Positions 7,280 to 43,199 of a DNA stretch of 44,150 nucleotides are shown one piece after another (the stretch's first letter is position 1; every line of letters begins with the position of its first letter). The notes beneath the pieces were generated by a model. That model saw only the letters and a program-made list of their open reading frames with translations, had not been told where the DNA came from and made no database searches. The stretch spans positions 110,839,412-110,883,561 of the forward strand of contig NC_068983.1 in NCBI RefSeq assembly GCF_001194135.2. The letters run 5' to 3'. The DNA is from Octopus bimaculoides. Lineage: Eukaryota. The position numbers and the translations under genes are program-made.

Positions 7280-7310
7280 TACTTACATATATATGTATAT
7301 ATATGCATAT

Positions 7311-7908: not shown

Positions 7909-8006
<98 letters not shown>

Positions 8007-8383: not shown

Positions 8384-8464
<81 letters not shown>

Positions 8465-9632: not shown

Positions 9633-9669
9633 ATGGGTATATACATACATAAATATGTATATATATATA

Positions 9670-9800
<131 letters not shown>

Positions 9801-11704: not shown

Positions 11705-11811
<107 letters not shown>

Positions 11812-12318: not shown

Positions 12319-12381
<63 letters not shown>

Positions 12382-12383
12382 TA

Positions 12384-12530
12384 ATGGTTTCAAATTTTGC
12401 CACAAAGGCAGCCATTCTGGAAGAAGAATGAGTCAATTACATCGACTCCAGTGTTTCACTGGTACTTCGACCGCAGTGTTCCATGGTACTTCGACTCCAG
12501 TGTATCACGGGTGCATTATTGACCTCATAT
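12384..12530 (-). mobile_element. 3' part of a tRNA-SINE (second family) with (ATT)n tail and an internal triplicated 24-25-nt unit
   Basis: Minus strand ...AGTACCAGTGAAACACTGGAGTCGATGTAATTGACT...GTGGCAAAATTTGAAACCATT(ATT)n. Homologous to 14945-15063 and 25861-26020. Confidence 0.65.
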
Positions 12531-12844
12531 ATGTGTTGCGTGTGTGTGTGAATGTGTGCGCGTGTGTCTACGCATTTCCATCTACTTAACTATAAGTTTT
12601 CTGCCTGCCTCTTTGTATGTATGTATGAATGTATGTATGCATGTGTGNNNNNNNNNNNNNNNNNNNNNNNNNNNNNNNNNNNNNNNNNNNNNNNNNNNNN
12701 NNNNNNNNNNNNNNNNNNNNNNNNNNNNNNNNNNNNNNNNNNNNNNNNNNNNNNNNNNNNNNNNNNNNNNNNNNNNNNNNNNNNNNNNNNNNNNNNNNNN
12801 NNNNNNNNNNNNNNNNNNNNNNNNNNNNNNNNNNNNNNNNNNNN

Positions 12845-13252
12845 TTTTTCCGTTATCATATTTCGGACCGGTGCCCACAGGGGAATTGTCAAACGTTGAA
12901 CAGGAATGGCGAATCTGACATTCTTGCTGCAGCCCATACATACATCAATCGATCGTTGTACATACAATCAATTCCTCCAGGACCATTGTGAGTCGAACAA
13001 AATTGTGATTGATGAACAGGTTGGTGGAAAGAAGCGAGTGTTGGGATGTGCCGAAGAACTTTTAGCGAGTAAAGCTGTACTGTCGGACGTAAGAGAACAA
13101 CGAAGAAACCTTGCGACAGTGTGGCTTGACTGTAAGAAGGCATTCGACTCTATCACTCATTCATGGCTGTTGAAGTGCCTACATCTGGCAAAGATACCTA
13201 CTATCTTAATTGCTGCTATAGAGAGACTCACAAAGACATGGACACCTATTCT
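12845..13252 (+). pseudogene. R4/Dong-type non-LTR reverse transcriptase fragment
   Basis: ORF 12906-13382 contains EQVGGKKRVLGCAEELLASKAVL...RRNLATVWLDCKKAFDSITHSWLLKCL, homologous to the RT at 40756-41199. Similarity stops at the element starting at 13253. Confidence 0.8.
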
Positions 13253-13467
13253 TACAGTTCTATATTTAAGAGACAAGGAATTACGTACATTATTTACATT
13301 TGACGGATATTTCTCCTCATCTTGTTTGTTGTTAACACGACGTTTCGGCAGATATACTCTTCAGCCTTCATCATGTGTTTAAGGGAAATTTCGAACCTGA
13401 GTTCTCATTCCGAAGGTATTATTAATATTATTATTATTATTGTTGTTGTTGTTGTTGTTCTTGTTGC

Positions 13468-13527
<60 letters not shown>

Positions 13528-13684
13528 AGTTACTGCTTGGAATCGAACTCAGAATCTTGGGGTTAGTAGCCGGCACTCTTAACCACTATATGCCCAACAA
13601 ACAAGATGAGGACAAATATCCGTAAATCTTGTAAATAATGTAAATAATGCACATAATTACTCATCTCTTAAATATGGAACTGTA
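13253..13684 (-). mobile_element. Small non-autonomous element: inverted arms of about 80 bp, tRNA-derived head, (TAA)n and hammerhead motif
   Basis: Left arm 13253-13330 (TACAGTTCTATATTTAAGAGA...CTCATCTTGTTTGTT) is the reverse complement of right arm 13595-13684 (CAACAAACAAGATGAGG...TCTCTTAAATATGGAACTGTA). Minus-strand B box GAGTTCGATTCC at 13539-13550 and A-box remnant TAGTGGTT near 13581-13588. Confidence 0.8.
13334..13379 (-). ncRNA. Minimal type-I hammerhead ribozyme relic (Penelope-type)
   Basis: Minus strand AACAC-ATGATGA-A-GGCTG-AAGAGTATAT-CTGCC-GAAA-CG-TC-GTGTT. Stem I is 5/5 bp, stem II 4/5 bp, and stem III is the palindrome ACGU. Core position C3 is changed to A. Confidence 0.75.
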
Positions 13685-13799
13685 TATGTATGTTGTTTAC
13701 CGTTCTGTTATTTCTTTGATCAGCAAAAGAGTACTCCAACTTTATATGTATATTAATAATAATAATATGACAACAAAAGAATGAATGAGATCTCGATAT

Positions 13800-14117
13800 T
13801 ATGTAAATACGCGTATTCTATGAGTGTGGGTTTACCTTCTTCGAGTATTTTTACTTTCTCGCTATACAGGTAACTTCCCTTTATTTAACGGTCATTTTCA
13901 TAACATCTTTGTTTGTCTTAATAACTGACGAGATGCCGGAGCAGACATCCGCCCCGACATCTGAAACTCTGAGTTTTATTATGGCAACCGTGAAGAGCGT
14001 TTCTCGAAGCGTTAAATACTTTCTGTATTCCCGAGCGTCAAACTAATACATCCTTTTGTTGTTTACACCACCTGTCCTCGTCTGTTGTTGTTGCTTTTCG
14101 TACATTCTCCCATATAT
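13800..14117 (+). mobile_element. Probable Penelope-like pseudo-LTR fragment carrying the hammerhead
   Basis: Hammerhead fold followed by a pyrimidine-rich tail running into (TA)n and a gap. Family identity is inferred from the known association of Penelope-like elements with hammerheads. Confidence 0.4.
13919..13981 (+). ncRNA. Type-I hammerhead ribozyme-like fold
   Basis: TAATAA-CTGACGA-GATGCCGGAGCAGA-CA-TCCGCCCCGACATC-T-GAAA-CTC-T-GAG-T-T-TTATTA. Stem I is 6/6 bp and stem II 11/14 bp. Stem III ACTC/GAGT has a 1-nt loop. Core CUGANGA/GAAA/UH is intact, with one extra U before G12. Confidence 0.7.
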
Positions 14118-14944
14118 NNNNNNNNNNNNNNNNNNNNNNNNNNNNNNNNNNNNNNNNNNNNNNNNNNNNNNNNNNNNNNNNNNNNNNNNNNNNNNNNNNN
14201 NNNNNNNNNNNNNNNNNNNNATATATATATATATATATATATATATAACATCATTGCAGCGGCACTTAAAAGTAATGATTTTCCCAGTACTACAGCTCAG
14301 AGAGAGCGGAAGAAACGCGAATTCTTCCGCTCTTATGCTCTAATTATTCAGTACATGAACACCTTGACATCATCCTAGGACGTGACTGCACCAAGGATGA
14401 CAAAAAGGATGGACAAAGCCTGCAGGGCCCAACGGTCTCTCAAAAGAACTATAACAAACCCACGGTTGATAGGCCTACAAGCGAGGGAAACAATGATACT
14501 GGTACGGCCCCCAACACATCAGAAGACCAAATAGGTGTGAGGGCCAAAAATGAAAATTTATATCTATGCCATTTAAAATACACGGTATTGAAACACGAGC
14601 TACTAGTAGCTTCAGGGTGTGGAAACACAATATATCGGCAGGCTCCTCTTTTTGCATTCACCTTCCATTTGTTGCTTCTCGTGTCTGCTCGTAGACTTTC
14701 TCGTTTCTCCAAATGAGGTCAGATAAGCTGTGTATTTGACCCTAAAGGATTGCTTGGAGGCACAAGACATGATATAAATCAGACGATTTATTATGTTCCC
14801 AGAACATGAACTTAGATGCAATTTCTATATAAATATATGCAAGTGAAATAATATATATGCGTGTATATATATGCATCTGTATGCGCGCGTGTATGGAGGT
14901 GTACGAACATTCTTATTTCTAACACCGCAGATATCAGCTTTGCA

Positions 14945-15063
14945 ATTCATCTCTCCGGGATCGATTAATCAAAGTACTACCTAAGTACTGGTGTCGATGT
15001 AACTGACTATCTTCTTGACCCTAATATTGCTCATGTTATGGTTCCTCAGTTCAAAGTTTGAAA
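14945..15063 (+). mobile_element. Degenerate tRNA-SINE body (second family)
   Basis: TTCATCTCTCCGGGATCGATTAATCAAAGTAC...GTACTGGTGTCGATGTAACTGACT...AAAGTTTGAAA aligns by eye to the reverse complement of 25861-26020 and 12384-12530. Confidence 0.55.
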
Positions 15064-18000
15064 AAATATGCAAATGTTTTCGCCTTAAAACATATTATAT
15101 ATAATCACTTAAAGCATGCAAAACTTCTAGAACATTTACTGTGCATTCAGTGGTTTGCAGCTGCAAATTCCTAACTAATAATGACCATACTAATTTATAC
15201 AAACAAAAAAAACAAGATTGATGCTGAGGCAATTAGTTACATATCTAAGTGACCCAATAATAATTGATATATTTCTAAGACTAATAATATTGGTGTGATA
15301 ATTGCAAATTTTCTATTAGTTCAGCTTGTCTTCGTTTTCACTAATTTTAAACATTATAATGATTTTCTGCTGGGCGGCTGATTTGCCTTATTGGCACAGT
15401 TTCTACCCTTTGTTCCAGATCAGTTTTCCTACGCTATAATTTACTTGGATGGTGGCAGGAAAATTCCATTTTTATGGATTTATATAATGAGAGGCTGTAC
15501 TCTCTATGTTATTGAAACATTTTATAATTTTTCCTTCTGAATAGACTGTCTCTATTAGAGGTGGTGTGGAAATTTTCGGTGTTCGTTTATAATTTTCGTG
15601 TTTTAGCTGCAATGACTTCCATCACATTTAATATTCATTCAAGTAACAAAAATGTTGGTATCACTACTACTAGGGTACTGTTTTATTGCATTTAGAGAGT
15701 AGTTAGCAGCATTTGTTATGTGTATCAGTTCTCGGTCAATACGTCTCAAAGAAATACTCAAATATCAAGAAAACATTTGAAGAAAATTACCTTCTGAGCT
15801 TGCTTACACATTCGCCAGTGATCCGACTGTTGAATTCTTTTATTGACTTGTTAGAAAACCGCACAAAATAAATAGATAAATGAATAAATAAATAAATAAA
15901 TAAATAAAAGCAATGTTTAGATTTATAATTAACGTCCATCATCAGAATGTATAAGACACAGGATTAAATACATTGGATTTTTTTTTTCACTTTATTTTCC
16001 GAATTCATATTTTACTTGACTAGATTTGATAAAATTACGTCCGAGTATCTTTCTAATTATTGGCTATTTAGATATATCAGAAATCTATATATGCTTATAG
16101 CTACAACGAAGGTGATATTTAGAAAAAAAAAACAAGAAGAAAAAACACGATTTTAGAAATAATGTAATCATAAAAAACTTGGTCACATTATCTTAAAGAA
16201 CATTCTTCCGATATTTAGAGATGGATTTAACTCAGTTATTAATAGAAATGTTACAATATGACTAAGCCCTACACTCAGAAATTGTGCTGAAATATTATGT
16301 AAGTAATACTGTGCAACGTACTTGAACGAGGTCTGGAAACATGTTCACACAATCAGTTGCTGCAAATTTTGCGAAAGGTAAAAAACTATACATTGTTAAG
16401 TTATCCCTATTAAGTTTACTATTTATTATTCAGAAGTACGGTTATGCATCTTCTAAATTGTTTGCAATCTTTCTACCTTTTATGATCGAGAATCAAATGA
16501 TCACATGTTCCGCTAGTAAATGAAATAATAAAAAAATGTGTTAACGAGTTATTTTAAGCACTGGTTCTTAATCACGCTTACAGTAAGATAAATATAATTC
16601 CAAAAATGCATTATGTAGATAACGAACTGCTGTCATCAAATATAGGATTATCCACATTATATAAACATGCTGCTTATGTACTCTAATCTCGAACCAAATT
16701 TCAGTGAGATTTCTAACAGGTGTAGTACTTGGAATATAAAATTAGTTTGCTTTTCTCTTCCTCACCGCTGCATTTTACAAGTGAGTTCAATATGTTGTAA
16801 TCATTAGTCTGTTCAACATTGGTGAGCTGTTATATATTGGTACAATTTTCCAGTTTGTTATGTGGAAGTTGAAATTTTGAGCGTGTTAAGACTAAAAAAA
16901 AAAAAAAGCTTGGAACTGTTTTGAAGTTGATTAAACGAAAACGAAAAGAACAAATTTTTAACTAACATCGATATATATTCTCTAATATATCGAAATTTAC
17001 GTTCCCTGTAAATTAATTAGTACAAAAGATAAATTTAAACCATATAGACTTAAGCAACATTTCTGATTTAAATTTTTTTTTTTACTTATACAAAACTGCA
17101 AATTCTGATGGAACAACAGTAATGTTGATATATTACATTTGTATTGTACCTTTCTAATCTGATTGTATTCTATATTTTGATCATTCTCTGTCTGCATCTG
17201 TCACGAGACACGAAAATAACGTTTTAGTAATTGACAAAAATTTCTAATAGCTTAAAATCGTCTACAAATTCTTATCAAAACAATATTTCGGGAAAGAAGG
17301 AAAAAGAAACTATATCAATATTGTTAACTCTAATCCTTCGAGAATATCATTATACATACATATATGCATACATCTTCATTTATATATATATATCGATATC
17401 TATATCTATCTATATGTATATACATGAATGATGAGCTTCTGAATATTTTCAATGTTGGCTTCTCTCTACATATGTCCATATATGAATTTATATGCATATG
17501 GATATGTATATTTCATACACCAAATACAAGCGTGTTTATTAGTTTCAAACACATACATACACACGCGCACGTGCGCACACACATACATGCTTGTATATGT
17601 GTTGCCCGTATGTATGTATCTATGTGTATATATGTGTGTGTATGTATATATATATATATATATATNNNNNNNNNNNNNNNNNNNNNNNNNNNNNNNNNNN
17701 NNNNNNNNNNNNNNNNNNNNNNNNNNNNNNNNNNNNNNNNNNNNNNNNNNNNNNNNNNNNNNNNNNNNNNNNNNNNNNNNNNNNNNNNNNNNNNNNNNNN
17801 NNNNNNNNNNNNNNNNNNNNNNNNNNNNNNNNNNNNNNNNNNNNNNNNNNNNNNNNNNNNNNNNNNNNNNNNNNNNNNNNNNNNNNNNNNNNNNNNNNNN
17901 NNNNNNNNNNNNNNNNNNNNNNNNNNNNNNNNNNNNNNNNNNNNNNNNNNNNNNNNNNNNNNNNNNNNNNNNNNNNNNNNNNNNNNNNNNNNNNNNNNNN

Positions 18001-18257
18001 NNNNNNNNNNNNNNNNNNNNNNNNNNNNNNNNNNNNNNNNNNNNNNNNNNNNNNNNNNNNNNNNNNNNNNNNNNNNNNNNNNNNNNNNNNNNNNNNNNNN
18101 NNNNNNNNNNNNNNNNNNNNNNNNNNNNNNNNNNNNNNNNNNNNNNNNNNNNNNNNNNNNNNNNNNNNNNNNNNNNNNNNNNNNNNNNNNNNNNNNNNNN
18201 NNNNNNNNNNNNNNNNNNNNNNNNNNNNNNNNNNNNNNNNNNNNNNNNNTATATATA

Positions 18258-18293
<36 letters not shown>

Positions 18294-18544
18294 TATGCTA
18301 TGATCATGCTGATCAGTGTTGTGTTTCAATACTGCAGAACACCTTTCCAATTACGTTGAGTTTGTGTTATGTGTTCCTAATACCTGATTCATTTCTGTAC
18401 AGTAAATGATGGTTATCCAAGAATTCCTTGTACATATGAATCGAGTGTAGTACAAACAGATAATTGTCATAAAAATGCTTTTCTGAGAAGAAACATAACA
18501 GTGATATTCACTTTCGAATGAACCTGAAAGTATTAAAAATAAAT

Positions 18545-19893
18545 ATGCTTCAATGTGCAAATAGCTTCAATGTGCATAACTGGAATAACAGTGAAATAAT
18601 GAAAATTGATCGAAAACTCCGCAAGCTCTGACTTGTAATAAGATGCACCATCCAAAGGCAGAAATGGATCGTCTTTATCTTCCCAGAGCTCAGGGAGGTC
18701 GATGCTTGATCCAGCTTGAAATTACGTACAAACCCACTACAATCGGACTAGCCAAATACCTTGAAACAACCAACGATTGGATGCTGAAACTTGTTGAAAA
18801 ACACAAAAGAACGAAAAAACTTTATTCTATTCTGAAAGAGACCAAAACATTCGTTACTGATCTCTTAGATACCCACAAGCTTGATCAGGTTGAAGGCAAT
18901 GCGCCAACTGCTGCTGCAAAAAAATAAAATTAAATGCAAAGACAAAAGCACATGAAAAATTAGCTAGCAGATGGGAACAGTAACCTCTGCATGGCAAGTA
19001 TTTTGCCCATAGCAAACAAACTGATGTCGACCAGAAACACACGCATAAATGGTTACGAAGCTCAGTGCTAAAAGCAGAGAGTGAAGGATTCATATTAGCT
19101 GCTTAATACCAAAGCTTATTAACCCGGAACTACCAAGCCAAAGTGATAAAAAATGGAGCTGACCTACAATGTCGATTCTGTAACGATGAGATTCAAACTA
19201 TAGACCACCTAATCTCAGGGTGTAGAGTCTTAGCACCTGTAGAATATAAAGCAAGACATGATAGAGTCGGCCAGTATTTACACCTGACAGTATGTCGGCA
19301 TTATAAAATCAAAACCGCTGACGATCCTGAAGCTGTGACTGAAGGAGAAAATGTATCGATTCTCTGGGACTTCCCCGTACATACCGACAAAACTATAAAA
19401 GCTGATAAACCGGATATTATTATAAAAGATCAGAAGAAAAAGGTCTGTTTATTAATTGACATGAGTATTCCTTGCGATCAGAATATAGCGGCGAAAGAAT
19501 TTGACAAGATCAGTAAATATAAAGACTTGGTAATAGAAATCGGAAAATGTAGCATCTCAAGGCGACTACCGTACTAATGATTGTAGGAACTGTAGGAATG
19601 ATAAAAAATAAAGGTACTGATGTCTATTTGAAGATAATACCAGGCTTACCATCCCTACTGGAAGTGCAAAAAATTGTGTTAACTGGAACGACTCGTGCCG
19701 TATTATCGCTGTGAAAACAAAATCCATTCATGAATTTGTTTATTCATAACATTTTTTAAATACATATTTTACTTGTGAATATGCGTGTGTAAATTGGGAA
19801 TGCACACAATGAGCTTCTCTGCCTTAGGTGTACTGAAAATACTCGGAGAGAAGTGTAAGAAAATTTGAAGAAAGAAGGAAACAACATAATAAT
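18545..19893 (+). mobile_element. 5'-truncated R4/Dong non-LTR retrotransposon (subfamily A): post-RT region, CCHC knuckle, REL endonuclease, 3' UTR
   Basis: MHHPKAEMDRLYLPRAQGGR; PLHGKY; CRFC...HLISGC (CCHC); RHDRV; KPDIIIKD...LIDMSIP...KISKYKDL (PD-D-K nuclease). Several stops and frameshifts. The 3' UTR is shared with 42915-43130 and ends in a short TAA tail. Confidence 0.92.
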
Positions 19894-19954
19894 ATGAATG
19901 AAAGTAATATGAATAAAATGTATGTTGCTTTTGACCCACCCTCTATATATGTAT

Positions 19955-19956
<2 letters not shown>

Positions 19957-20004
<48 letters not shown>

Positions 20005-20017
20005 CATACCCCTCTCA

Positions 20018-20065
<48 letters not shown>
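19957..20065. repeat. (TATC)n and (TA)n microsatellites
   Basis: Tandem repeats visible directly. Confidence 0.9.
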
Positions 20066-20521
20066 TGTGTCATCCCATAAATAATGCAGTTTTTTTCAAT
20101 TCAGCGCTAGAAGGAAACCGACCATCTTTGTTTTCATGACGAAATGTGTTGTTCCATCAGAATAATGCTCGGTCACATACAACAAGGATGACATTCCAAA
20201 GGCTGGAGCAATTTGATTGAGAATCGATGTCGCACACAGCATGTTCGACGGTCATGTCCTCATCTCATTAATTTATTCCGCAATCTTCAAAATCATTTGT
20301 ACGAAAAAAAATATGAATTCTTCAGACAAGGTCAGAACAGTACCGGAGGTGCATTTTTCTTCACGGACAAGTGGACTTTGGAATAGGGGCCTTGCAAGTC
20401 TACTAGACAGAAGGTAGAGCATTGTAGAAAATGGAGAGTATATTTTAGATTAAAAAGGTACATTGTTTATCTTAATTTTGGAAAAAAAACCCCGCATTAC
20501 TTATGGTATGACCCAATACAT

Positions 20522-20939: not shown

Positions 20940-21531
20940 AGGCGATGCTTTATCTATTCACCAAAGTGAATGGACCCTTGGACAGGAGGAGCTGATTGCG
21001 GCGGAAGATACTCAACCTTGATCGGGTTTTTCAACTCTGAACCGTAGCACCCTACCGTTAATGGGTCAGCAGAGTTGGCCAAGTCACTGCCCCTGATGTC
21101 CGCTTGGTTTCCAGCTTAACTCTTCTCCCTTACTCCAAAGCCTACAAAGGGCTCTTTCAGATGCCTTTCCCATCCCGCGCACTGTCACCATTAACTTCTT
21201 ACCTCTTCTTCCAATTGTTGTAAGTATCCTCTATGCCGACTGAGCAGAGAATCCCCTAAAACCAACATCGACGGGGAAAAGCCATATCTGCCATCCGTTC
21301 TCTCTGCAATCCTGCAGCAGGCTGTCATGTCTGTCACGCTTCTGTTAATGGCCTCATCACAACTCTTTCCCCACGGGACTGTTAGTTCGATTGCGTTAAT
21401 TTTCTTGACCTTTTAAGACCACACAACCACATCTGGCCTCTCGGTTGTATGGACGACCTGAGGAAACTGCAATATCCCATGGTTGAGATACTTTATGCAA
21501 GCTATGTATTGCTTTTGCTGACTTTGCTGCT

Positions 21532-21579
<48 letters not shown>

Positions 21580-21772
21580 GCACACACAAACTTAATTGCT
21601 GCTGTTGCCTTCCCTTGGTGATGATATTTCTTGCGCCTTTCCTGTTCCAGAGGGCGAGCAAGTGTTGCAAGCAGGCCATCATGGCACCATTTATATCTGC
21701 CTTGAGAAAGTGCTGTTCTGCACCCTGCCAAGATGTGTGCCAGAGTATCCCTTTCTCCACAAAATCTACATA
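20940..21772 (-). mobile_element. HERO-like REL non-LTR retrotransposon 3' fragment
   Basis: CRFCGERDTLAHILAGCRTALSQGRYKWCHDGLL (CCHC plus the RYxWRHD-type motif), LQFPQVVHTTERPDVVVWS, IELTVPW, LFPVDVGFRGF. This arrangement is characteristic of the HERO clade. Frameshifted; the 5' end runs into (CA)n. Confidence 0.8.
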
Positions 21773-23559
21773 TATGGATGTATGCGTGTGTGTGTATGTG
21801 TGTGTGTGTGTGTGTGTGTGTATGTATCTGGTACATATGTTTTCTTGTGTATTATAATGCGTGTATTTGTGAGTGCATGTGTTGTTGTAATGTAATCTGG
21901 TATGATTTCCTTTGAGTGACATCATAAAATATTCTTTCATTGGAAAGAATATGAAATGCTATCTATATCTGTAATGTTTATGTATCTATCATTATTTTAC
22001 TAATACAAAACCTGATGGTGCTTGTAAATGTTTGATTTTTTGACTAGAAATAATAGCCAAATCTCCCTCTAGTCACACTATGCTGTTTTTAAAACACTAG
22101 ATGTGTATCTTTTGATAACAAAATGAAATGAGTTATATTTGGGATGGATGGCAACAAAAAGCCAAATATAACACACTTGAACTTTACATCACTTCGATTT
22201 CGTCAACTGTAACATCTAAAACTTTACCGAGCGCTTAATTTCCATTTACTTCAAAGCAAATAATACATCACTTATTAACTAAATGAATCGTTGTTAAAAT
22301 CCAATAGCTAACCGACTAACTTTTCAATCGAGAAATTTCCTAGCTCGCTTGAAGAAAGAAGAAATGTTGCTAATATATCAACGTGATCGCGTATTTACTC
22401 GTATTGTTTGCTTCTCTCCGCTTCTGTCTTTCTGTGTTACGTCCCTCAGTTTTCCTTCTCTTATTCTCTATATTCATAATTTTACATTCATGTATACAGG
22501 TAAATATGAAGTAAGAATCAAGAAACCTGCCAACCGTTCTTCTATTTATTAATTATTAAATTAAATTTACTATCATGACATCATATAATGAAAAATCACA
22601 GCACAAGATACATGTTTTCTTTATGGGATTCCGAACTTCAAACATGCGAGAAGCCATATTGAAGGTCAGGCTGAATATCCGTAGGGCGTAATTAAACTAT
22701 AGCAGATGGCACATTCTAATTATCTAAATCGATATGACTGTAAATGTTGCCAATACTATATACGAAGAAAGGTCACAGGTGGGTATTTATTGCAGGCCCA
22801 AATGGACATTAATTTTCTGCTTTAGTAGACTAACGTACTAGCTCTCAATTAAATGCTACAGCCTCTATAAGAACTTTGATGAACCAAGACGTTATGACAA
22901 AGGGTCATATAAGAACTTTGATATACATTCCTGGGGTCACTGAGACTGAAAAACAAGTAATAATTATCATAGACTATCTCACAATTCTCCACTGATGTAC
23001 GGTAGAATCACAAATGATAATAATTACTGTTTAGCTGGCAATTACTATATTTGAGTTGATAAATAATCCGTTTTGTACTTACAACCCTACAATGGTAGGC
23101 TAGGTTTATGATAAAATACATTCCTGTCATATAAATTCAACCATTTAAAAAAATTTTAGATAATGCATTGCCCACTCTGATTCCTCTGTCATAAGCTATA
23201 GTTGATGGGATTTGGTTGCTGTTACTAGCAGTCTGTGTTACCGCGTAGCGGTTTCTCGTTGGTTCAAGACATAAATAGTTAAAGTATAAAATACTTCGTT
23301 TGATACAATACGTAAATAATGTTACAATATAGTTATGATAGAGCAATATACTATATTATCAGGAAAAATGAACATAAATGCATTTCTAAGCATCATATGA
23401 TCCACGTAGATTATTCATTTTTTTATAAAATACTTCTGCGTTTAAAATGTTTCTCTTAGATGGAATTAAAGATATTTACATATCCTATAGGCTCATCATT
23501 AGAAACCTAGCTTGGCAAAACTTATCTCTTCAAAAACGGCAAAAAATATTTGAATTATA

Positions 23560-26020: not shown

Positions 26021-28685
26021 AATTTCTTTATTGCCCACCGAGCGCTAAGCACAGAAATGGATAGAACAACTGATGGGATCAGTAATGAGATATGGTTTTA
26101 CATAGAATGTGAATTAAAAATTAAATAAAATATCAAAAATCAAATGAAATTAACAATACAGACACAATACAAATGAAGCGGTGATCAGGCCACGCTCCGA
26201 CCGCACAAGTCCCGATCTATCGCTGGTACCGTTTTTTGTTCTTTTTTCCGTCTATTCACACGGCTCTTTGCATGCATAACACTTGTGTAATATGCTTTCA
26301 TCTCTTTTGGAATTTACACTCCGACAGACATCTCTTCTCCAGCCACACCTTTCTTTTCAAATGAAAAGTAAAAAAAAAATGATCGTAAATTGTGGCCAGA
26401 TATAAAGTTGCCTTTTCATCCTAGTCTTCCATATTGCCTCTTTCGCTATTGCTTCAACCGTAAGAAAACAATTCTTACCTTCGTTTGTTAAAACGCCCAG
26501 TGGGTNNNNNNNNNNNNNNNNNNNNNNNNNNNNNNNNNNNNNNNNNNNNNNNNNNNNNNNNNNNNNNNNNNNNNNNNNNNNNNNNNNNNNNNNNNNNNNN
26601 NNNNNNNNNNNNNNNNNNNNNNNNNNNNNNNNNNNNNNNNNNNNNNNNNNNNNNNNNNNNNNNNNNNNNNNNNNNNNNNNNNNNNNNNNNNNNNNNNNNN
26701 NNNNNNNNNNNNNNNNNNNNNNNNNNNNNNNNNNNNNNNNNNNNNNNNNNNNNNNNNNNNNNNNNNNNNNNNNNNNNNNNNNNNNNNNNNNNNNNNNNNN
26801 NNNNNAACCCAAATGAAACGGTGAAGCAGGTGGTCCAGTTGAATAAACTCGAGACTTTAGAGACGCCGCCAGGCCACCGTCGCATTCAGACTCTACCAAC
26901 CCACTATATAAAATTCATGTGGAACCCTACTGCTGGCGTCGCCCGAGCGCCGGAATAGTAAGAAGGCCTTACATCACTCTTTATACCATTCACTCGACCT
27001 CGGTCTTTGAGAACATCAGGCCTCCTGTTCACAAAAACGTTTGAACTCGGGGAACATTTGTCTGGCCAGCGGTGACCACACCCGTTCACTATCCAGGATA
27101 ATTCAGACGTTCCTCAACCTCAACGCATGTCTGCGCATCATTAACCAAAGCATCCATAAACTTCCTTTTAAAGGCTTTTGACAGCAGACATTGCGTTTCA
27201 CAAGTGGCGACCTGTCCTTCCACAAAAAGCGAAAGAGCTGTTTCTCCAACCTGATCAACCACGAATCCTGACAGGGCACGACGGTCAGCCAGTAGGTAAT
27301 GACCGATGCGATAAACACATTGGCAACCTCCGCCCTCTCTTTCAGGGATAGCCACCGCCAAGACCAGGTCTTGACTACTACAGCCACTCTGCTCAATACC
27401 TCCGTCCAGTTTTTCTCTATCTGGGGGTCTGGTCCGAACCAAACTCTCATCGACTTAACCGGTCCCTCTGTCCAGCACCCAACAACGCTGTCTGAAGGCA
27501 TCGACTTGACAACTGAGGTTCCAAACTGCAAGCCGACCGACGTTTCCCGGTTAATCTTTGCTCCTGCCACCTCCTCGTAAGCCTCAATAGTTTTACCCAC
27601 TTCGCGTAGGCGTGCTACTAAGGTTACGCTGATAGTGATATCATCCGCGTAAGCCGTAACAAACTCCTCTAGACCTGGTTCTCTCGGAATACCACTCAAC
27701 CTTCGCAGTAGGGGCTCGAGAGCCACCAAATACAAAAGTGATGAGGGCGGACATCCTTGACGAACCGAGCGTCTGATGCAGAACGGCTTCGAAAGGAAAC
27801 CGTTCACCCGAACTATCGAGTCAATGTTGTGGTACAAAAGGATAAAGCACCTGAAGAAGACAACGCCCAGACCGAAACGCACAAGCACAGTCGCCAGGTA
27901 TCGATGGTCAATCCTATCAAAAGCTTTAGACTGGTCCAAATGTACCAATGCCCCACCTTTGCCAGATTTATCACCAACCCTCTCTATGGTATAGCCAATA
28001 AGGTGGATATTATCCTAACTGGATCTGCCTGGGATGGCACATGTCTGTGCCTCCCCGACTATACCATTCGTGACACGCACCAACGTTTTTGCTAAGACCT
28101 TGGTCAAAATCTTCACTTCTGCGTTTAACAGAGTGATGGCCTGAAATTCTCTATAACGTCCCCCTTGTCCGGGTCCTTTCTGACCAACGTCACTACTCCC
28201 TGGCGCACATATCTGGGGATGAACCCATTCTGTTGCCAGTTCGCGTACACGTCAGCGAGTAGATGCCTGAACAAGTCTGGTATACGTTTATACAACTCAT
28301 ATGAAAGACCATCAAGTCCCGGTGACTTACCCGCTTTACAGTTGGCCAAAACTTCCATCAGCTCCACAGGCGTGATCGGCCTTTCGCAAGACTCCGCATC
28401 CGACACCGAAAGACACAGCATCCAGACAAGAAAGTCCTCGTGGGCTCTCCCACCATTAGGACAACCGACACACCCAAACAGCTGGGAGAAATACTCCCAA
28501 AGGGCCTCACACATTTTCTCGGGTTCATTTACAAGATATTATTGTGATTCGTCAAAAACCGAATAGTGGAACTATTTCCTTGCCGAGTTTCCAGCACTCG
28601 GGCCAATCCAACGGCCTTGATTCTTTCAGTACACGGTGCCTTCCACCCCAAAAGTGACAGCGATAGGCTGTACTTGTCCAGAAGA
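26021..28685 (-). mobile_element. Tx1/L1-clade non-LTR retrotransposon, 5'-truncated (RT, C-terminus, 3' UTR), with an assembly gap
   Basis: GKSPGLDGLSYELY, NFRP; LDQSKAFDRIDH (the Tx1-typical DQxKAFDR), VRQGCPPSSLLY, AYADDIT; C-terminal AIAKEAIW. The 3' end carries AATAAA at about 26028-26033. Confidence 0.88.
27103..27948 (-). pseudogene. Tx1 reverse transcriptase core (longest intact stretch, 281 aa)
   Basis: ORF track: RT motifs including YADD. Flanked by frameshifts and stops. Confidence 0.85.
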
Positions 28686-28689
28686 TAGT

Positions 28690-29275
28690 GTGGGAGATGT
28701 ATGGTCAGTTGCCAGGATTACAGCGAAACATAGGAAAACAGCTTAGGATGGTATGTAAAAAAATGCTGTGGAGCCATATTTGAAACACACGAAAAAGGCC
28801 GGCGTCATCAAAACTTAGAATTGTGTAATGAAAGAAAAATTTGAAGAGGAAAAGAACACAAAAAAAGAAACAGCATGGAAGGAAAGGAATGTACGGACAG
28901 TTTGCAAGTGATACGAGCGCCAAGACAAATACAGAAGACCAGTGGCTATGGACGAGGGAGCGTGACCTGGCGATAAAGTCAAAAGCACACACATGTGCAG
29001 CTCAAAAACAAGTGTTAAGGACCAACTATGTGAAGTGCAGAATAGACAACATATTCGACAGCGGCAAATGCAGAATGTGTGTGGTGAGGGTGTTAAAACG
29101 GTATGGTGCATCGTCAGCGAATGGCCGAAATTGGCACAATGCAAAAACAAAAAAAACATGACAATTTGGCAAGTATGATCTGTTGGGACCTCTGTGGAAA
29201 TCACGACCTAGAAAGAGCAAAGACGTGGTATAAGTAAACCCCAAAAGGAGTCACAAAGAATATAGCATGATACTT
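28690..29275 (+). mobile_element. R4/Dong fragment (pre-knuckle and CCHC region)
   Basis: GMYGQF...QWLW...AAQKQVLRTNYVKCRID...KCRMCGEGVKTVWCIVSE.PKLAQ, then a decayed RHD motif and WYK. Confidence 0.8.
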
Positions 29276-31394: not shown

Positions 31395-33399
31395 GTGTTG
31401 TTGTTATTTCAGTTTGTCTTACTTTTACTGTTTGTTTTGCAACATAACAGGGTTAGTTCTATGCGTATTCGGTATGTCTTTTGCTTTTTACAGTTCAGAT
31501 AACGTTTCTCTACGTTATATAATTGCCTAATGCTTCTATTTTCAATACATTGTATATGTAAGTTCTTTGTTTATATATAACATCTATTTTCATTGTTTAT
31601 ATATATATCGTTAGCTATTTTCTTTTTTCTTAAGGCAGCTATTATTAAAGGATTTGTTTCTCTCTTCATTGACATTTCTATTTTTAGATATTTAAACTTC
31701 TTAGTTTCTCATTTCTTTGAGATATATATTGTTGTCTGTTGGAACTGATTCGTCTATTATAAAGTATTTCTTTTCCTGGTTGTATTTGACTATATTGACT
31801 GGGTAATGTTCTTTAATCTTCCCATCTTCGTGAATCGGCATGCCCCAGAGCATATTCAATTTGTCATTCCGAAATATTATTTCTGATGTCGGTTGTGCCA
31901 TCTTGAATCTTTTCATATTCTATAATACTGGCATCATTCCCAATATATGAAACTTACACATCTATCATACTCATTTATATACTCCAAGTTGGCTAAGACA
32001 AAGCAACCAGAAAAGTTGTGATTGATTGCCTCTTTGCATTTTCCACATCTTCTGAATTTACAGATTACCTAGTGCGTCTTTATGTTTACCGTAGTTCCGG
32101 ATGTAAGGCATTAGTCTTCTACTGCAATAAAGCCGTTACTTTTGATTGTGTACTGAGAATTGCATTGTTTCAGTTTAGCTCAATACAAGCTTCTCTTTTT
32201 TTTTGTTGTCCAAGTAGGATCTTTCTTGTAAATGTGTTAGAAAGAATTTTAAAATTAAGTTTCACTTCTTAAATATTGTCTTTAAGCATTTCTCCAAAAC
32301 TTTCAACTGTTTACCACTACAATCTGTGTTCTATATTTTTAGGTGCCACTAAACTGAGAAAACGTTTCGTGAATGGTTTGTTAGTAATTACAGTTAGTTA
32401 TATACTAAATAACTCTTTTCAAGAATATTTATTTTATATGGCTTACTCACAAATTGCACTAGATCACATCTTTTCATCAACCTGAACTCGAAAGTTCAAA
32501 ATGTTTACACTGTACACTTCATAGAAGAAACGTACACTTCCATAATCGTGTCTGACTCGATTCACCTAGTCCCATACCTAATAGAATATTGAAGAGTTGA
32601 CTCTTTACTACCGTATTGTATATGCTGTCAAAATAATTAACTTGCCTGTTACTTTCATTTTGAGGTATGGTTTGGATTGAGAACATTATAATGATAATAC
32701 CCATTTTATTCTATGGAGGATTTCAGTTTAAAAGTTTATCTAAAATATCTACGCTATTTCTTTCTCAATTTTTCTTTCATTTACTTGTGTACTTTGCTCA
32801 TTAATTCTTAACAGCTTGTAATCCGGTTATTTCTTCTCTGATTATTTTGTCTTTGATTCTTTAGTTACCAATAACATCACTGAATGTTATTCATTTTCCA
32901 CTCTTAAATGTAATGTAGCCTAGGAGCTGGCTAATTTACTTATTGTGTATTTTAAAAAAAGGGTTTTCAGTTATTTGTTATATGTAACATGGAAAAAGTC
33001 TATCTACAGGAGACGGTTGAGCGACATTCTATAGCACTAGTATCTACATCCGAATTATTCGGTAAAGGTTTCGGAGGGTAGGAAATAAAATAAAGCAGGG
33101 GTTCCGTTGAAATTGTTGCATTTTCTTGGGCATCATGATCTTGAACAGTTTCATCCTTTGTTGTGCAGAAAAATGTTGTTATTTTATTCTTTGCACGTTT
33201 GTTATACGGATATTCTTGCAAGTTATTGGTGTTATCAAATGGCTGATCATCAAACCATAATATACAAGACCCCTTCCTTCTTTACGAAGTTAATATTACA
33301 TTTATAGATTAGTAATTGATACTTTACAATTCAACCTTTGATGTATTCACTCTGTTCATCTAGAAGCATATATACATATATTCATGTGTGTATATGTAT

Positions 33400-33441
<42 letters not shown>

Positions 33442-34700
33442 ACACACACATACATATTTAGTTTCTCAATCCTCATCTACTCTTTGTAGAAAGATTGGTG
33501 TTGAGGACATTTTTATATGGTAAGCAGCATGTTATGAGTATATATGTTATGGCGTCTAAGGTTTCTCCTGCTTTGCTAAAATGTATGGCTTTTGTAAATC
33601 CTTAAAGTACCATTTCAAGTTGTTTTAGTAGATGACTGAACTGTTACATACTTTATACATACTTTTGACAAATATCATTTCTATTTGTTCGTAATCTTGT
33701 ATATTTGTGCAAGATTGGTCAATATTCCCTCATGATAGAGCTGTCTTCCTTTATCTATTGTGGGTAAGTGGTTTTTCATAAAATTACTTGAATTTGCAGA
33801 GAAAACGTAGAATTCATAACTAAGTATTCTTGCTCTGCTTTAAGGAGTACCTTTCTTCTTGGGCGCCTTTTGATTCCGATTGATTCTTTTGTTATACTTT
33901 TATATTTTGTTTATCTATCTGTCCTTTTTTGCCATTTATATGTTTCCGTGACCAATCTAATTGAGACTAGGAAATCTTGTCTTTTATTTGCCACCTTCCA
34001 CTGTATCTCTGTTTAACAACTTATTTGCTTAGGTTTAAATATTTCTATAGAAATTTCCTTTGTACCAGCAGCGGCGGATACACAATAGATGAGTTGATTT
34101 ATTTAGGCGATATTGATATTCACATCTGTTTCCACGATGGTTATTATAACTTATATTGCTGTTGTTATTTTACCATTCAATTTTATCTTTTGAAGAGTCT
34201 TTCGTTGGTTGATAGAAACTTTTCTATTGGCTCTACTACTAGCTCTTTAGAGTAACGCCATATTCAGATTTTTCAAGTGTAGAACTTCCAACTCTACGAT
34301 CCTTTTCACATTCCTTTGTGTGCATGTATATTCGTTAGAAACATTCAGGTCTAGCATTTGTTGAACTTTATTTTGTAGGTATGTTCGGCTTTGGTTTTGT
34401 ATTTTGTTCTCTTTTTTTTTCTTCATTCTTGACCTTGTTCTATGTCTTCTATATTCATGATTCATTTATGTTCGCAAAGTTTTTAGCTGTAGGTACTAAA
34501 ATTTTTTTATTCGTTTGTTTTTATATTTGGTGCTTCTTTGTATTTATGTAATATTTAACTTGATTCTTGAATTTTTATGAATCCCTACTTTTTTATTGTT
34601 ATTTCTGTCCATCCTCTTGTTCTTATAATCTCAGTTCAGTCCTGGTTGTGCAAAACTATGACCAGTGGTAATATTTCCGTGATCATCTCTTTTATGATTA
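31395..34700 (-). mobile_element. Old, heavily decayed, possibly near-full-length R4/Dong element
   Basis: The 3' half is clear: GKCKEAINHNFSGC..LANLEYINEYDRCVSFIYW and LWGMPIH...IIDESVPTDNNIYLKEM (31700-32150). The 32500-34700 part gives only scattered similarity (PITCKNI; INQLIY) and is tentative. Contains a (CA)n tract near 33400. Confidence 0.55.
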
Positions 34701-36190: not shown

Positions 36191-38299
36191 AATGCACCAC
36201 CTCTTCTACATCTTCCGCCTCCTACTACTGCATTTCGCCCGTCAGTACATTTTGAGTTCAAGTTTCAAGTTTACGCGAAATCCTGCTGTCAAAAGTTTAC
36301 TTAAGGAATTGAATTTACTCTGATACTAATTTACTTCATATGAAAAGTGGTCAGAGTTGGCACCGTTAATGTAGCACCAGAATCAAATTTTTGATATTTG
36401 GTGGAATTTGCTCTGGGAAGGTATTCAGAAAATGAAACATTGGATTAAACGTGACTGGAGAACGCGAATTCGGTGAAATATGTGACACTATACTAGATCT
36501 CCGATCCACGAACTAACAGATATCTTAACTAGTGGAGATAATTAAAACCAAAAATCTTAGCTCTTACCACCACAACTGAAACAGCGTGAACAACATCACA
36601 CATAAATAAAAATAGCAAAATGAAGAGCGAAAAAATTATCATTGACAACGAATGCCACCACACCACACATAAGAGCGATAGGGACAGCAACAGAAAATCC
36701 TCAAAGCAACAACGTCAATCATACCAAACGAATACCACGAACAGGCCACTACCAACTTCGAGTTACTCAAACACTTCTTAAAGGGAAGTTTATGAAAATT
36801 GCTCTAAATGGTAATAGAAAGAAAAAAAATATTATGCCCGCAAAACACATCCGGGAGATCATCATCATCCTAACCACTACTACCACCGCCGCCACTATTA
36901 CCACCACTATCAGAACCACCAGTATCACAACTGAAATTACAAATGCAAGCACGATTTAATCAACAAACACATATCATCACCACAACATGAATAGAAAAAG
37001 AGCATCCTTGAACTACATGACTAAACATGCAAGCAGCTACATTAATGAATAACGTACATGAAGTTAAAAAGCATTACACAGAATAACTACATCCGCCCAA
37101 CAAATAACATACTGACACATATACAAACAACATAATAGACATGCAATCTGTCATTTAAAAAATCATTGGAGTAGAATATTTCGAATGGAATTGAATATCT
37201 CGAGTGGAATATTGATAAACGATTATGCAAAGATTAATTCGTGGAAACATCACTAACTAATCGTAATGGCAGAACACCTATCCTACGACAGAATGATATC
37301 AGTGGTTCTCCATTACCTCATTTAGTTTAGATTGATCTGAGTTCCACTTGGAAACAAGATCAATTTTTCAACAACCTCAGATCACCAGCTATATAATTAT
37401 TGTCTATTGCCATGACTATAATTTCCTAACCTCAAAGTATCACGCTCAGTTTTAGTGGCTGCAAGTTGTACGTATCTTCCTGTGACCTGAGATCGGGAGG
37501 GGGAATTATACTGTTCCAAATTATCTGGATCTCACAATATTAACTATAAACTTTTTATTCAGAAGGTAAGTTGGTGGTAGTAGACAAATAGAAGCAAAAG
37601 TCAGTAGTTCTGCAGCTCGATACCTGAAGTGCAGAACTGGGTACCCAGTCTAACCCTCAAAAAGACCAAAAAGAATAAATCTTTCAAGGGTGGCACAGAA
37701 GTAGCGAAAACTTATATCACCTCAGTCCTCTATTACCATATGACTATCATGCTTTCCCTGTCTATGATTAATGAGACGGTGACATGCTCCGAGGTTACAA
37801 CATTTGAGGTTACAACGTTTTCTCCAGATAATCTCTTTTAGAGATCTGCAGTCCTAAATCAAGCAAAATCTAAGGTTGCTTGATATCTGGATCATCATAA
37901 AACGCTCTAAGAGTCAAGCAATGCAGTTGGTGGAAATTACTCATTGCTGATCTATAGGCTGTTAGAGGATATAAAAGGCCACCTTCTCGTGGAAAATGTG
38001 GGTATCGAAGAAAATCTACTGACAAGTCTGTCCCGGGTGATGTCTAATCTTTGGCATGTAGATTATTTCCAGAAATACATGGCAATTCTAACTAGCGGCG
38101 CTGGTGCTTCCAGACAAATTATACAATACAAGTGTTTAGTCAGCCGGGCCTCTCTGAGACACGTACACAGCAATGATACCAATCTGCATGCACTGAGCTT
38201 CTTTCACTGGTTAAAATTGACTTCACTGGTCAGCAATGCCCTCAGTGGTCAACGAGCATTGCTGACTTTTATAATTAGTTAAAACCCAAATATGTGCTG

Positions 38300-39180
38300 T
38301 TTTCTATATGAAGATCTCCTGTCGCCTTCTATTAATGAGGAAGAGTAGGCAATTTTTATACATCTAGGAAGCACGGATAAAGGGGTGTAGTAGTGGATAA
38401 GGTTGAACGCGCTGAAACCAAACTCGTCTTTGGACAAGGATTACTTGAAAAGGAAAAAGATAGTGGCGAGCGACTTGAATGAAGAGGAATTCCCGGTAGG
38501 CGGCGCGGGTCATCAGCCCGCGTCGATCACATTCCTGCCCTTTGTACACACCACCCGTCGCAACAACGTAAAAGACCAGAAAGCATCATGAAGGTAGCTT
38601 AACAAGGGTGACCTAACAAAGAATGCTGAAAGCATAACCATCGCTGCCCAGGACCAGGTATTGAATACCAACTCAGTGGAAAAGAATGTATACCACTCAG
38701 GTGCAAAAGCCATCTACAGAATGTGTAAGAAGAAGGTCGAAAGCGTACAACACATTGTTAATGCTTGTGAAAGTCTTGCGCAGAAAACAAGCGTAGACAC
38801 GACAAGGTAAATCAAAACTTCCACTAGCTACTATGCCATAAGTATGGATATGATGTTACGGTGCTTGGAAGAAAAGGTAATGGACGAAAAGAGGAAAGTA
38901 AAACTCCTCTGCGACTTTGACTTCGAGACAGACAAGGTATTAGACCACCGAAGGCCGGATATCGTAACCTTTAGAAGGGACAAATAAGAGTGCCTAATAA
39001 TTGAGGTGACAGTGTCAGGGGATCAACATATCATCATTAATGAAAGAGAAATGGGTGATAAATACGGAAACCTGAGAATTGAGGTCGCTAAGATATGGCA
39101 GCTACGAGAGTTAAATTTAAACGCTATCCCTGTTGTCATCGGAACATTAGGTTAAATACCACCCCAACGGAAAAAAACAT
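38300..39180 (+). mobile_element. 5'-truncated R4/Dong element carrying an 18S rRNA insert
   Basis: DYLKR; LNKGDLTKNAESITIAAQDQVLNTN; RMCKKKVESVQHIVNACESLAQK; RHDKV; DFETDKVLDHRRPDIV; LIIEVTVSGD; KYGNL; PVVIGTLG. Confidence 0.85.
38484..38561 (+). rRNA. 18S rRNA fragment (3' major domain end, helix 43 to start of helix 44); a dispersed copy, not an rDNA unit
   Basis: GAGGAATTCCCGGTAGGCGGCGCGGGTCATCAGCCCGCGTCGATCACATTCCTGCCCTTTGTACACACCACCCGTCGC matches the conserved eukaryotic SSU segment GAGGAATTCCC...GTCAT.AGC..GCG..GAT...CCTGCCCTTTGTACACACCGCCCGTCGC. Hairpin CGCGGG/CCCGCG is intact. Confidence 0.9.
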
Positions 39181-39184
39181 CTGA

Positions 39185-43199
<4,015 letters not shown>

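What the first reader, a model, noticed from the sequence alone, without database searches (positions are those of the whole stretch)
38470..38570. 18S rRNA fragment embedded in sense orientation and in frame within a Dong retrotransposon
Seen: about 80 nt of the conserved SSU rRNA 3' region sits between Dong coding sequence (DYLKR upstream; KDQKAS*R*LNKGDL downstream). It appears to replace the segment that carries the LHG/MYGQF motif in the other copies, and ORF 38403-38591 reads through it with no stop. Known: RTs of REL-clade elements such as R2 jump between RNA templates, and R4 itself targets rDNA in nematodes. Inference: a double template switch (element RNA to 18S rRNA and back) during reverse transcription, or repair-mediated capture. 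If other copies share it, a retrotransposon lineage propagated with a piece of the ribosomal decoding region.
Basis: partly seen in the sequence, partly recalled or inferred. Interest (0 to 1): 0.76.

Follow-up and report, generated by a model that had tools for sequence, protein, structure and literature searches.

The report
18S rRNA patch in dead retrotransposon
One decayed, 5'-truncated copy of a Dong-like retrotransposon carries 82 bases of the host's own 18S ribosomal RNA in place of about 120 bases of its coding sequence. It is a real, single-copy, non-functional scar of a known kind, not a propagating element lineage.

Summary
Window 38480-38561 (82 nt, + strand) is host 18S rRNA sequence covering the conserved ...GTACACACCGCCCGTCGC stretch. 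It differs from the host's high-copy rDNA by three transitions, a 1-nt deletion and a 3-nt duplication.

Dong-like coding sequence lies on both sides in the same orientation. The downstream side (38562 onward) is robust. The upstream side (38348-38479) rests on weak but significant motif matches (0 of 2000 shuffles). About 40 codons, including the conserved LHGQF motif, are missing exactly where the patch sits.

It is not a mis-assembly. Contigs at single-copy depth cross the 5' junction in eight runs and the 3' junction in four. Exact 31-mers link the two halves.

No other copy in the genome shares either junction, so there is no propagated subfamily. The copy is dead, with stops and a frameshift, so the "in-frame ORF" means nothing.

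The mechanism is unresolved between two routes:
- capture of an 18S-derived fragment at a break in an integrated copy (about 0.45, favoured on base rates);
- serial template jumping Dong-18S-Dong during reverse transcription (about 0.35).

This is a new member of a known kind, of low to moderate interest.

The parts
38348..38479 (+). Upstream Dong-like coding remnant, from the linker after the RT domain. GNFYTSRKHG*RGVV (38348-38392) matches the LYxxRxxGGRGL motif. After a frameshift, SSLDKDYLKRKK (38424-38459) matches the SLxxYL motif. The copy is 5'-truncated near 38348.
   Evidence: Colinear weak tblastn hits from many full-length relatives. Profile HMM: 8.7 and 4.0 bits, with 0 of 2000 dinucleotide shuffles reaching 8.7. 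This is the 4th best hit in the whole window after three obvious copies. No RT or other Dong similarity further upstream. No paralog at 80% DNA identity or more.
38480..38561 (+). 82-nt patch of host 18S rRNA, sense strand, running from TGAA(C)GAGGAATTCCC to GTACACACC(G>A)CCCGTCGC. It carries 3 transitions, a 1-nt deletion and a 3-nt GGC duplication relative to host rDNA.
38479..38480 (+). 5' junction, ...GCGACTTGAA|TGAA-GAGG. TGAA occurs on both sides in tandem and no collapsed microhomology is present.
   Evidence: A contig of 2192-2368 nt at single-copy depth crosses it with 0-1 mismatches in X1-X7 and X9.
38561..38562 (+). 3' junction, ...CCCGTCGC|AACAACGT. There is no exact microhomology. 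18S continues TACTAC, which matches 4 of 6 positions.
   Evidence: A 173-nt contig at single-copy depth (38503-38675, 0 mismatches) is present in X1, X2, X4 and X7. Ten paralog contigs per run start exactly at 38562, preceded by GAATTACATGGTCAGTTCCACCGTGAAACT (ELHGQFHRET). Exact 31-mers 38501-38531 and 38502-38532 link the two halves.
38562..39155 (+). Downstream Dong-like coding sequence: W.WL..GDL and IAAQDQ (38640-38663), CCHC knuckle YRMC..H....C (38715-38768), and endonuclease-type motifs RRPDIV (38949-38966), CLIIEV (38991-39008) and DKY (39051-39074), ending at VVIGTLG (39132-39152). It has 4 in-frame stops in 197 codons.
   Evidence: tblastn with full-length relatives: 31-39% identity, E down to 1e-32, covering 38568/38598 to 39152/39188. 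Motif coordinates.
39156..39499 (+). End of the ORF (about 39270) and the 3' untranslated part. The 3' end is probably near 39499, in an (ATAA)-like tail, but this is uncertain because everything downstream is repeat.
   Evidence: Word depth rises toward the 3' end and drops about 100-fold at 39508. Fourteen contigs end at 39499 with variable A/T-rich sequence after it.

Best explanation
The feature is a single-copy, inert scar. An old, 5'-truncated copy of a Dong/R4-type (R2-like, restriction-like-endonuclease) LINE lost about 120 nt of the linker between the RT and the zinc knuckle, including the LHGQF motif. At the same point it gained 82 nt copied from the host's mature 18S rRNA region, in sense orientation. 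It has no function and was never propagated.

Most likely route: the patch was captured after the copy had integrated. A break inside the copy was resected by about 120 nt. It was then sealed by end joining with a stray 18S-derived fragment as filler, either rRNA cDNA or an rDNA fragment. This is the way mitochondrial and other templated fragments are captured at breaks.

Shown: the anatomy, the host origin, the single-copy status, the deletion plus insertion at one site, and the decay. Inferred: the timing (after integration) and the joining pathway.
For: - A deletion of about 40 codons and an 82-nt insertion at the same point is the usual signature of break repair with filler.
- Neither junction shows a tail, and no target-site duplication of 8 nt or more flanks the insert.
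- Other 18S-derived pieces lie elsewhere in this genome at single-copy depth. These include truncated ones with non-rDNA flanks and different breakpoints, for example the 333-nt contig leaving 18S at 38536 and a piece starting at the equivalent of 38513. So a background process scatters 18S fragments.
- LINE copies of this type fill roughly a tenth or more of the window, so a random hit inside one is not rare.
- In the best-studied case, rRNA/LINE template-switch chimeras are a small minority of events (18 28S/L1 loci) and tripartite ones are rarer still.
- Patch divergence is 3/82. The Dong part differs from the paralog majority at about 12/139 sites. This allows the patch to be the same age as the copy or younger.
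Against: - Sense orientation is only a 1-in-2 outcome under capture but is required under template jumping.
- The patch lies inside the very kind of element whose RT is known to jump templates.
- It lies only about 130 nt from the copy's truncated 5' end, as expected if an RT lost processivity after jumping.
- No allele with an intact LHGQF segment at this locus was seen in eight runs.
- The ages of patch and copy are not significantly different.
Confidence: 0.45

Rival explanations
1. Serial template jumping in one retrotransposition event. The Dong RT copied the element RNA from its 3' end up to position 38562. It then jumped to an 18S rRNA fragment and copied 82 nt. It jumped back to Dong RNA about 120 nt further 5', on the same or a sister molecule, copied about 130 nt and stopped. 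The tripartite cDNA was then integrated.
For: - The full-length relatives' RT matches solved R2 proteins far better than L1 ORF2p: E 5e-21 against 1e-10. No APE endonuclease domain is detected in the relatives.
- An R2 RT performs robust serial end-to-end template jumps with 0-2 bp of pairing (PMC8594491).
- Double jumps giving tripartite chimeras are documented for LINEs (PMC2104539).
- 28S rRNA/L1 chimeras of 50-482 nt, mostly in sense orientation, are documented (bioRxiv 10.1101/2025.02.02.635956).
- The patch is in sense orientation, the junctions are clean, the 5'-most segment is short, and the patch lies within mature 18S.
- A 7-nt match (CCGTGAA) and a 4-of-6 match (TACTAC/AACAAC) between 18S at the patch edges and Dong around the departure point hint at homology guidance (note 3).
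Against: - Tripartite chimeras are rare where they have been counted.
- Return to the same element near-colinearly has to be assumed.
- No target-site duplication or tail defines a single insertion.
- The homology-guided version predicts that LHGQF is retained upstream, and it is not.
- No second example was found among junction contigs.
Confidence: 0.35
2. A single template switch, giving an ordinary bipartite 5' chimera of 18S plus 5'-truncated Dong. On this reading the upstream 'Dong-like' similarity is chance or belongs to an unrelated older fragment.
For: No paralog at 80% DNA identity or more covers 38362-38479, whereas thousands of word-depth units cover the downstream part. The upstream flank is one unbranched 2.3-kb unique contig. 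The protein hits are individually weak, with E of 0.5-2.
Against: The profile score is reached by 0 of 2000 shuffles. Two motifs occur in the right order, strand and distance from the downstream part. Downstream paralogs are themselves only about 82% identical, so a more variable linker would fall below the 80% cut.
Confidence: 0.08
3. RNA-level recombination before reverse transcription. A cleaved Dong RNA was ligated to an 18S fragment, for example by an RtcB-type ligase, and the chimeric RNA was then copied once.
For: RNA ligation precedes U6/L1 chimera retrotransposition in human cells (PMC6789731, seen only in the search listing, not read). The sense orientation and clean junctions fit.
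Against: Two ligations in the right order are needed, and no data here bear on it.
Confidence: 0.05
4. Assembly artefact or contaminating non-host 18S.
For: No single read or contig spans both junctions. The 3' junction contig is missing from four of eight Logan contig sets.
Against: Zero-mismatch single-copy contigs exist at both junctions, the 5' one in runs of four studies and the 3' one in runs of three. 31-mers carry both the left-specific base (38501 C) and the right-specific base (38531 A). The patch matches the host's own rDNA-depth contigs. Contig sets show presence, not absence.
Confidence: 0.02

Closest known systems
[quoted passage not shown]
   Same: A fragment of an abundant structural RNA, here rRNA, is fused in sense orientation directly to the 5' side of a 5'-truncated LINE 3' part. 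The size of 82 nt falls within the 50-482 nt reported for 28S/L1.
   Different: The element is an R2-like, restriction-like-endonuclease LINE, not L1. The RNA is 18S. LINE sequence also lies 5' of the rRNA piece, so the piece is internal and replaces about 120 nt. No target-site duplication was found.
Tripartite chimeric retroelements from double template jumps (Magnaporthe WEIRD/Mg-SINE/MGL; human examples)
   Same: Three segments are joined head to tail, with the LINE 3' part last.
   Different: Here the first and third segments are the same element and are colinear. The Magnaporthe case is validated by a 14-bp direct repeat, which is lacking here.
Serial template jumping by R2 reverse transcriptase in vitro
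   Same: The relatives' RT matches solved R2 proteins best, E 5e-21. The junctions here have 0-1 nt of pairing, as in end-to-end jumping.
   Different: That is an in vitro property. Nothing here shows that the RT made this junction.
Filler or templated insertions at repaired double-strand breaks (NUMT-type capture, templated sequence insertions). From my own knowledge, not read here.
   Same: A short piece of distant, highly abundant sequence is inserted together with a local deletion. There is no tail and no target-site duplication.
   Different: The usual 1-4 nt collapsed microhomology is not evident. No ancestral allele was available.
rRNA-derived SINEs (5S-derived SINE3, 28S-derived SINE28), cited within
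   Same: An rRNA piece is joined to a LINE-related 3' part.
   Different: Those are amplified families. This junction is single copy.

Membership tests
Dong/R4-type LINE (R2-like, restriction-like endonuclease) | Reverse transcriptase of the R2 group and no N-terminal APE endonuclease | tested here: met
   Full-length relatives (P0056, P0044, P0015) have RVT_1 only, with or without zf-RVT. The best solved-structure matches are R2 proteins at E 5e-21, against L1 ORF2p at 1e-10. The window copy itself lacks the RT because it is truncated.
Dong/R4-type LINE (R2-like, restriction-like endonuclease) | C-terminal CCHC knuckle followed by a PD...(D/E)...K endonuclease motif | tested here: met
   Read directly: YRMC-x11-H-x4-C at 38715-38768, RRPDIV at 38949, CLIIEV at 38991 and DKY at 39051. 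Colinear with relatives. No curated domain model hit.
Dong/R4-type LINE (R2-like, restriction-like endonuclease) | Placement in the Dong clade rather than other R2-like clades; (TAA)n target | not tested
   No reference set of named clades was available. The tail looks (ATAA)-like at 39480-39499, but the 3' end is uncertain.
LINE template-switch chimera | Partner RNA in sense orientation, directly abutting the 5' end of a LINE 3' part | tested here: met
   Junction at 38561|38562. Paralogs start exactly at 38562.
LINE template-switch chimera | One target-site duplication and one 3' tail flanking the whole chimera | tested here: inconclusive
   No shared k-mer of 8 nt or more links either candidate 5' flank to the sequence after the 3' region, apart from an A-rich 11-mer. 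The downstream sequence is all repeat. R2-like elements often make no long duplication (my own knowledge).
Propagated rRNA-LINE composite (SINE-like subfamily) | Several genomic copies sharing the same junctions | tested here: not met
   Junction contigs are at 55-70 word depth, against 55 for the unique flank. At 80% likeness every other 18S-like contig continues as 18S, and every Dong-like contig is preceded by LHGQF-coding sequence.
18S rRNA gene (Rfam SSU_rRNA_eukarya) | Score at or above the family's gathering threshold | tested here: not met
   31.6 bits against 50. Only about 80 of 1831 model positions are truly aligned. It is a fragment, not a gene.
Break-repair filler insertion | Local deletion plus insertion of distant sequence at one point | tested here: met
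   About 40 codons, including LHGQF, are missing where the 82 nt are inserted.
Break-repair filler insertion | Existence of the pre-event allele (element without the patch) | tested here: inconclusive
   No alternative continuation at 38479 in eight contig sets. No long-read runs or sister-species data were available.

The most novel reading that the evidence does not exclude
The locus is a fossil of in vivo serial template jumping by a Dong/R4-clade reverse transcriptase. The enzyme left its own RNA, copied 82 nt of the 18S decoding-site region, and returned to its own RNA. The return may have been guided by short homologies (CCGUGAA, ACnAC) between the element RNA and 18S rRNA. This would imply that the RNP was close to small ribosomal subunits or rRNA fragments during target-primed reverse transcription.
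Probability: 0.3. Interest if true: 0.45.

Novelty: new member of a known kind. Interest (0 to 1): 0.25.

Why it matters
Taken alone, it matters little. It is one dead copy with no sign of transcription or spread.

Its value is as a data point. rRNA/LINE chimeras have been catalogued mainly for mammalian L1. An internal 18S patch in an R2-like LINE of an invertebrate-type genome suggests one of two things. Either these RTs also recombine with rRNA in vivo, or 18S-derived fragments are a recurrent filler at breaks in this genome.

A genome-wide census of such patches, scored for orientation and for enrichment inside Dong-like copies, would turn this anecdote into a test of in vivo template jumping by R2-like RTs.

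Tried and rejected
- **Rfam searches.** The gathering search found nothing. Whole-window and 5-kb e-value searches did not recover the SSU hit. The cmscan extension of the hit to 38200-38270 and 38566-38591 is spurious: it covers a hairpin and Dong sequence.
- **Self-BLAST.** No nucleotide-level sister copy in the window.
- **Protein search with a stitched query.** No hit.
- **First working idea: a simple bipartite chimera with non-Dong upstream flank.** It rested on the absence of paralog depth. I downgraded it after the colinear motif hits.
- **Alternative reading that frame-0 'VFGQG' is the LHGQF motif.** No profile support.
- **Rest of 18S elsewhere in the window, as expected for an insertion into an 18S pseudogene.** None.
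- **Target-site duplication searches from both candidate 5' ends.** None.
- **Ranking relatives by upstream against downstream similarity, to ask whether both halves share a lineage.** Uninformative, rho 0.2.
- **Long-read runs.** None served.
- **RNA-seq.** No reads.
- **Flank of the other truncated 18S contig.** Not in the window, so it is not an allele visible here.
- **36-nt 83% match at 38325-38360.** A chance hit with unrelated flanks.

Full report
**What is there**

The stretch reads ...GCGACTTGAA|TGAAGAGGAATTCCCGGTAGGCGGCGCGGGTCATCAGCCCGCGTCGATCACATTCCTGCCCTTTGTACACACCACCCGTCGC|AACAACGTAAAAGACC....

In a 601-nt search, cmscan aligns 38482-38565 with high posterior probability to SSU_rRNA_eukarya positions about 1602-1682. 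The score is 31.6 bits with E 7.5e-7, below the gathering score of 50. The rest of that alignment is forced. The hit disappears in gathering mode and in larger e-value searches. Rfam alone would therefore be thin evidence.

**Host origin**

The strong evidence comes from public runs of the same organism.
- Contigs with word depth of 10^4-10^5 cover 38482-38553, against about 55 for the unique flank.
- Their overhangs give the host 18S on both sides: ...ACCAACCCCGTGAACGAGGAATTCCCGGTA before, and TACTACCGATCGAACGG... after.
- Against this host sequence, the window piece 38480-38561 differs by three transitions (38531, 38533, 38553, two of them at CpG), a 3-nt GGC duplication and one lost C.
- The alignment scores 69, against at most 19 in 2000 shuffles.

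From general knowledge, GTACACACCGCCCGTC is the universally conserved segment at the base of helix 44, which is part of the decoding site.

**Assembly check**

- A contig of 2192-2368 nt at single-copy depth runs from unique upstream DNA across the 5' junction to 38530/31. It has 0-1 mismatches in eight runs from four studies.
- A 173-nt single-copy contig (38503-38675) crosses the 3' junction in X1, X2, X4 and X7.
- The two contigs share only rDNA-identical sequence. However, exact 31-mers 38501-38531 and 38502-32 are present at single-copy depth. These carry both the left-specific base (38501) and the right-specific base (38531).
- The 3' contig is missing from X3, X5, X6 and X9. Contig sets drop low-depth paths between high-copy nodes, so this shows nothing about absence. 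It does leave polymorphism untested.
- Raw-read sampling was too thin to help, and no long-read run was served.

**Downstream flank**

From 38562 the + strand encodes NNVKDQKAS*R*LNKGDL..IAAQDQVL..YRMC..H....C..RRPDIV..CLIIEV..DKY..VVIGTLG.
- Full-length relatives found by an exhaustive HMMER search align to 38568/38598 through 39152/39188, with E down to 1e-32.
- These relatives carry RVT_1 and no detected APE domain.
- They match solved R2 proteins at E 5e-21, against L1 ORF2p at 1e-10.
- 'Dong/R4-like, R2-type LINE' is therefore reasonable. Clade placement was not tested.
- At 80% likeness, ten paralog contigs per run begin exactly at 38562 and are preceded by GAATTACATGGTCAGTTCCACCGTGAAACT, which encodes ELHGQFHRET. 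The 3' boundary of the patch is therefore exact, and the conserved LHGQF motif lies immediately 5' of it in intact copies.

**Upstream flank**

My first reading was that the upstream flank is not Dong. No paralog at 80% or more covers 38362-38479, and the flank is one unique 2.3-kb contig.

A permissive tblastn then showed many relatives hitting 38339-38392 with the conserved LYxxRxxGGRGL motif at the colinear position. A profile of that region gave these results:
- It finds the three obvious Dong-like copies in the window, and then this site as the next best hit of all six frames.
- Restricted to 38250-38479, it scores 8.7 bits for GNFYTSRKHG*RGVV. None of 2000 dinucleotide shuffles reaches that score; their maximum is 8.3.
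- It scores 4.0 bits, above the 99th percentile of shuffles, in the next frame for SSLDKDYLKRKK, which matches the SLxxYL motif.

The downstream paralogs are only about 82% identical to this copy, so a faster-evolving linker falling below the 80% cut is expected. No Dong similarity exists further upstream, so the copy is 5'-truncated near 38348.

**What was replaced**

Aligned with relatives, the copy lacks about 40 residues between the SLxxYL motif and W.WL. From the LY motif to W.WL, a close relative (P0022) has 90 residues. The window has 77, of which 27 are the patch. An LHGQF profile finds nothing upstream. About 120 nt were therefore replaced by 82 nt.

**Is it propagated or functional?**

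No.
- Junction contigs have the depth of the unique flank. Every other 18S-like contig continues as 18S, and every other Dong-like contig carries LHGQF.
- The copy has 4 stops in 197 codons downstream, plus a stop and a frameshift upstream.
- ORF 38403-38591 starts at TTG and ends at a W>stop.
- Three RNA-seq runs, each about 6% sampled, gave no read.

**Mechanism**

Two routes fit the data.

(a) Serial template jumping, Dong RNA to 18S rRNA to Dong RNA.
- R2 RT jumps serially end to end with 0-2 bp of pairing (PMC8594491).
- Tripartite LINE chimeras exist (PMC2104539).
- 28S/L1 chimeras of 50-482 nt, mostly in sense orientation, exist (bioRxiv 10.1101/2025.02.02.635956).
- The sense orientation, the clean junctions and the short 5'-most segment all fit.

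(b) Capture of an 18S-derived fragment at a break in an already integrated copy, with resection.
- Deletion plus insertion at one point fits.
- There is no tail and no target-site duplication.
- Other truncated 18S pieces lie elsewhere in the genome.

Where these events have been counted, rRNA/LINE chimeras are rare (18 28S/L1 loci) and tripartite ones rarer still. A random insertion, by contrast, has roughly a 1-in-10 chance of landing in this kind of LINE, going by the window. I therefore put (b) slightly ahead, at 0.45 against 0.35.

The remaining readings share the rest:
- single-switch chimera, 0.08;
- RNA ligation before reverse transcription, 0.05;
- assembly artefact, 0.02.

Patch divergence (3/82) and the copy's divergence from the paralog majority (about 12/139) do not differ significantly.

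**Unexplained**

The Dong consensus reads CCGTGAA-ACT-AACAAC around the departure point. 18S reads CCGTGAA-C..patch..-TACTAC. A 7-nt match and a 4-of-6 match therefore bracket the patch (note 3). A homology-guided detour would predict that LHGQF is retained, and it is not.

**Verdict**

This is a known kind of event in a new element-and-RNA combination. It is single copy and inert.

Noticed in passing
window 39440-39507: A segment of about 50-65 nt (..ATATGACCGCAGCCACTTGGCTGAAACCCATAGATAAATGAATAAATAAG) has word depth of about 600,000-690,000, against about 55 for single copy. That is on the order of 10^4 copies. Fifty contigs start at 39453, and fourteen end at 39499 followed by variable A/T-rich sequence. 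It is probably the 3' tail module of a very abundant SINE or LINE.
   Followed up: no
organism A genome, seen through window 38484-38556: Several other 18S-like contigs sit at single-copy depth. They include diverged pseudogenes of 600-1177 nt and truncated pieces with non-rDNA flanks. One leaves 18S at the equivalent of 38536 (flank TTCTTCCACAGTAG..., not in the window). Another starts at the equivalent of 38513.
   Followed up: partly
window 39839-42800 (+): A second, longer Dong-like copy of a different family has no nucleotide similarity to the first. An (AAT)n microsatellite at about 42470-42600 interrupts its endonuclease domain, and the MSIPCD(H/Q)NIAA coding piece occurs on both sides of it.
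   Followed up: no
window 39200-39940: Paralog contigs run continuously from the 3' untranslated part of the first copy into the 5' region of the second, skipping 39443-39509. The head-to-tail arrangement of these sequences therefore recurs in the genome.
   Followed up: no
window 38231-38267: A hairpin with perfect 11-nt arms, GTCAGCAATGC...GCATTGCTGAC, lies in unique DNA upstream of the element. cmscan forced it into the SSU model and also gave a weak mir-92 hit.
   Followed up: no
window 795-20075 and 33364-33453 (many sites): Sub-threshold Rfam hits to mir-297, mir-466, mir-1277, mir-3149, mir-5014 and others all lie on (CA)n/(TA)n microsatellites. They are low-complexity artefacts. The window also has many N gaps (2888 N).
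   Followed up: no
runs X14-X16: Reads carry a palindromic linker, GGTTCGTCCATCGATCGATGGACGAACC. This is a proximity-ligation type junction, so loose ends showing it are library artefacts.
   Followed up: no
window 27103-28514 (-), 21396-21940 (-), 28653-28763 (+): Further retroelement pieces are present: a reverse-transcriptase ORF on the minus strand, a CCHC-containing ORF (CRFCGERDTLAHILAGC), and a third LYxxRxxGGRGL-type motif hit at 16 bits.
   Followed up: no
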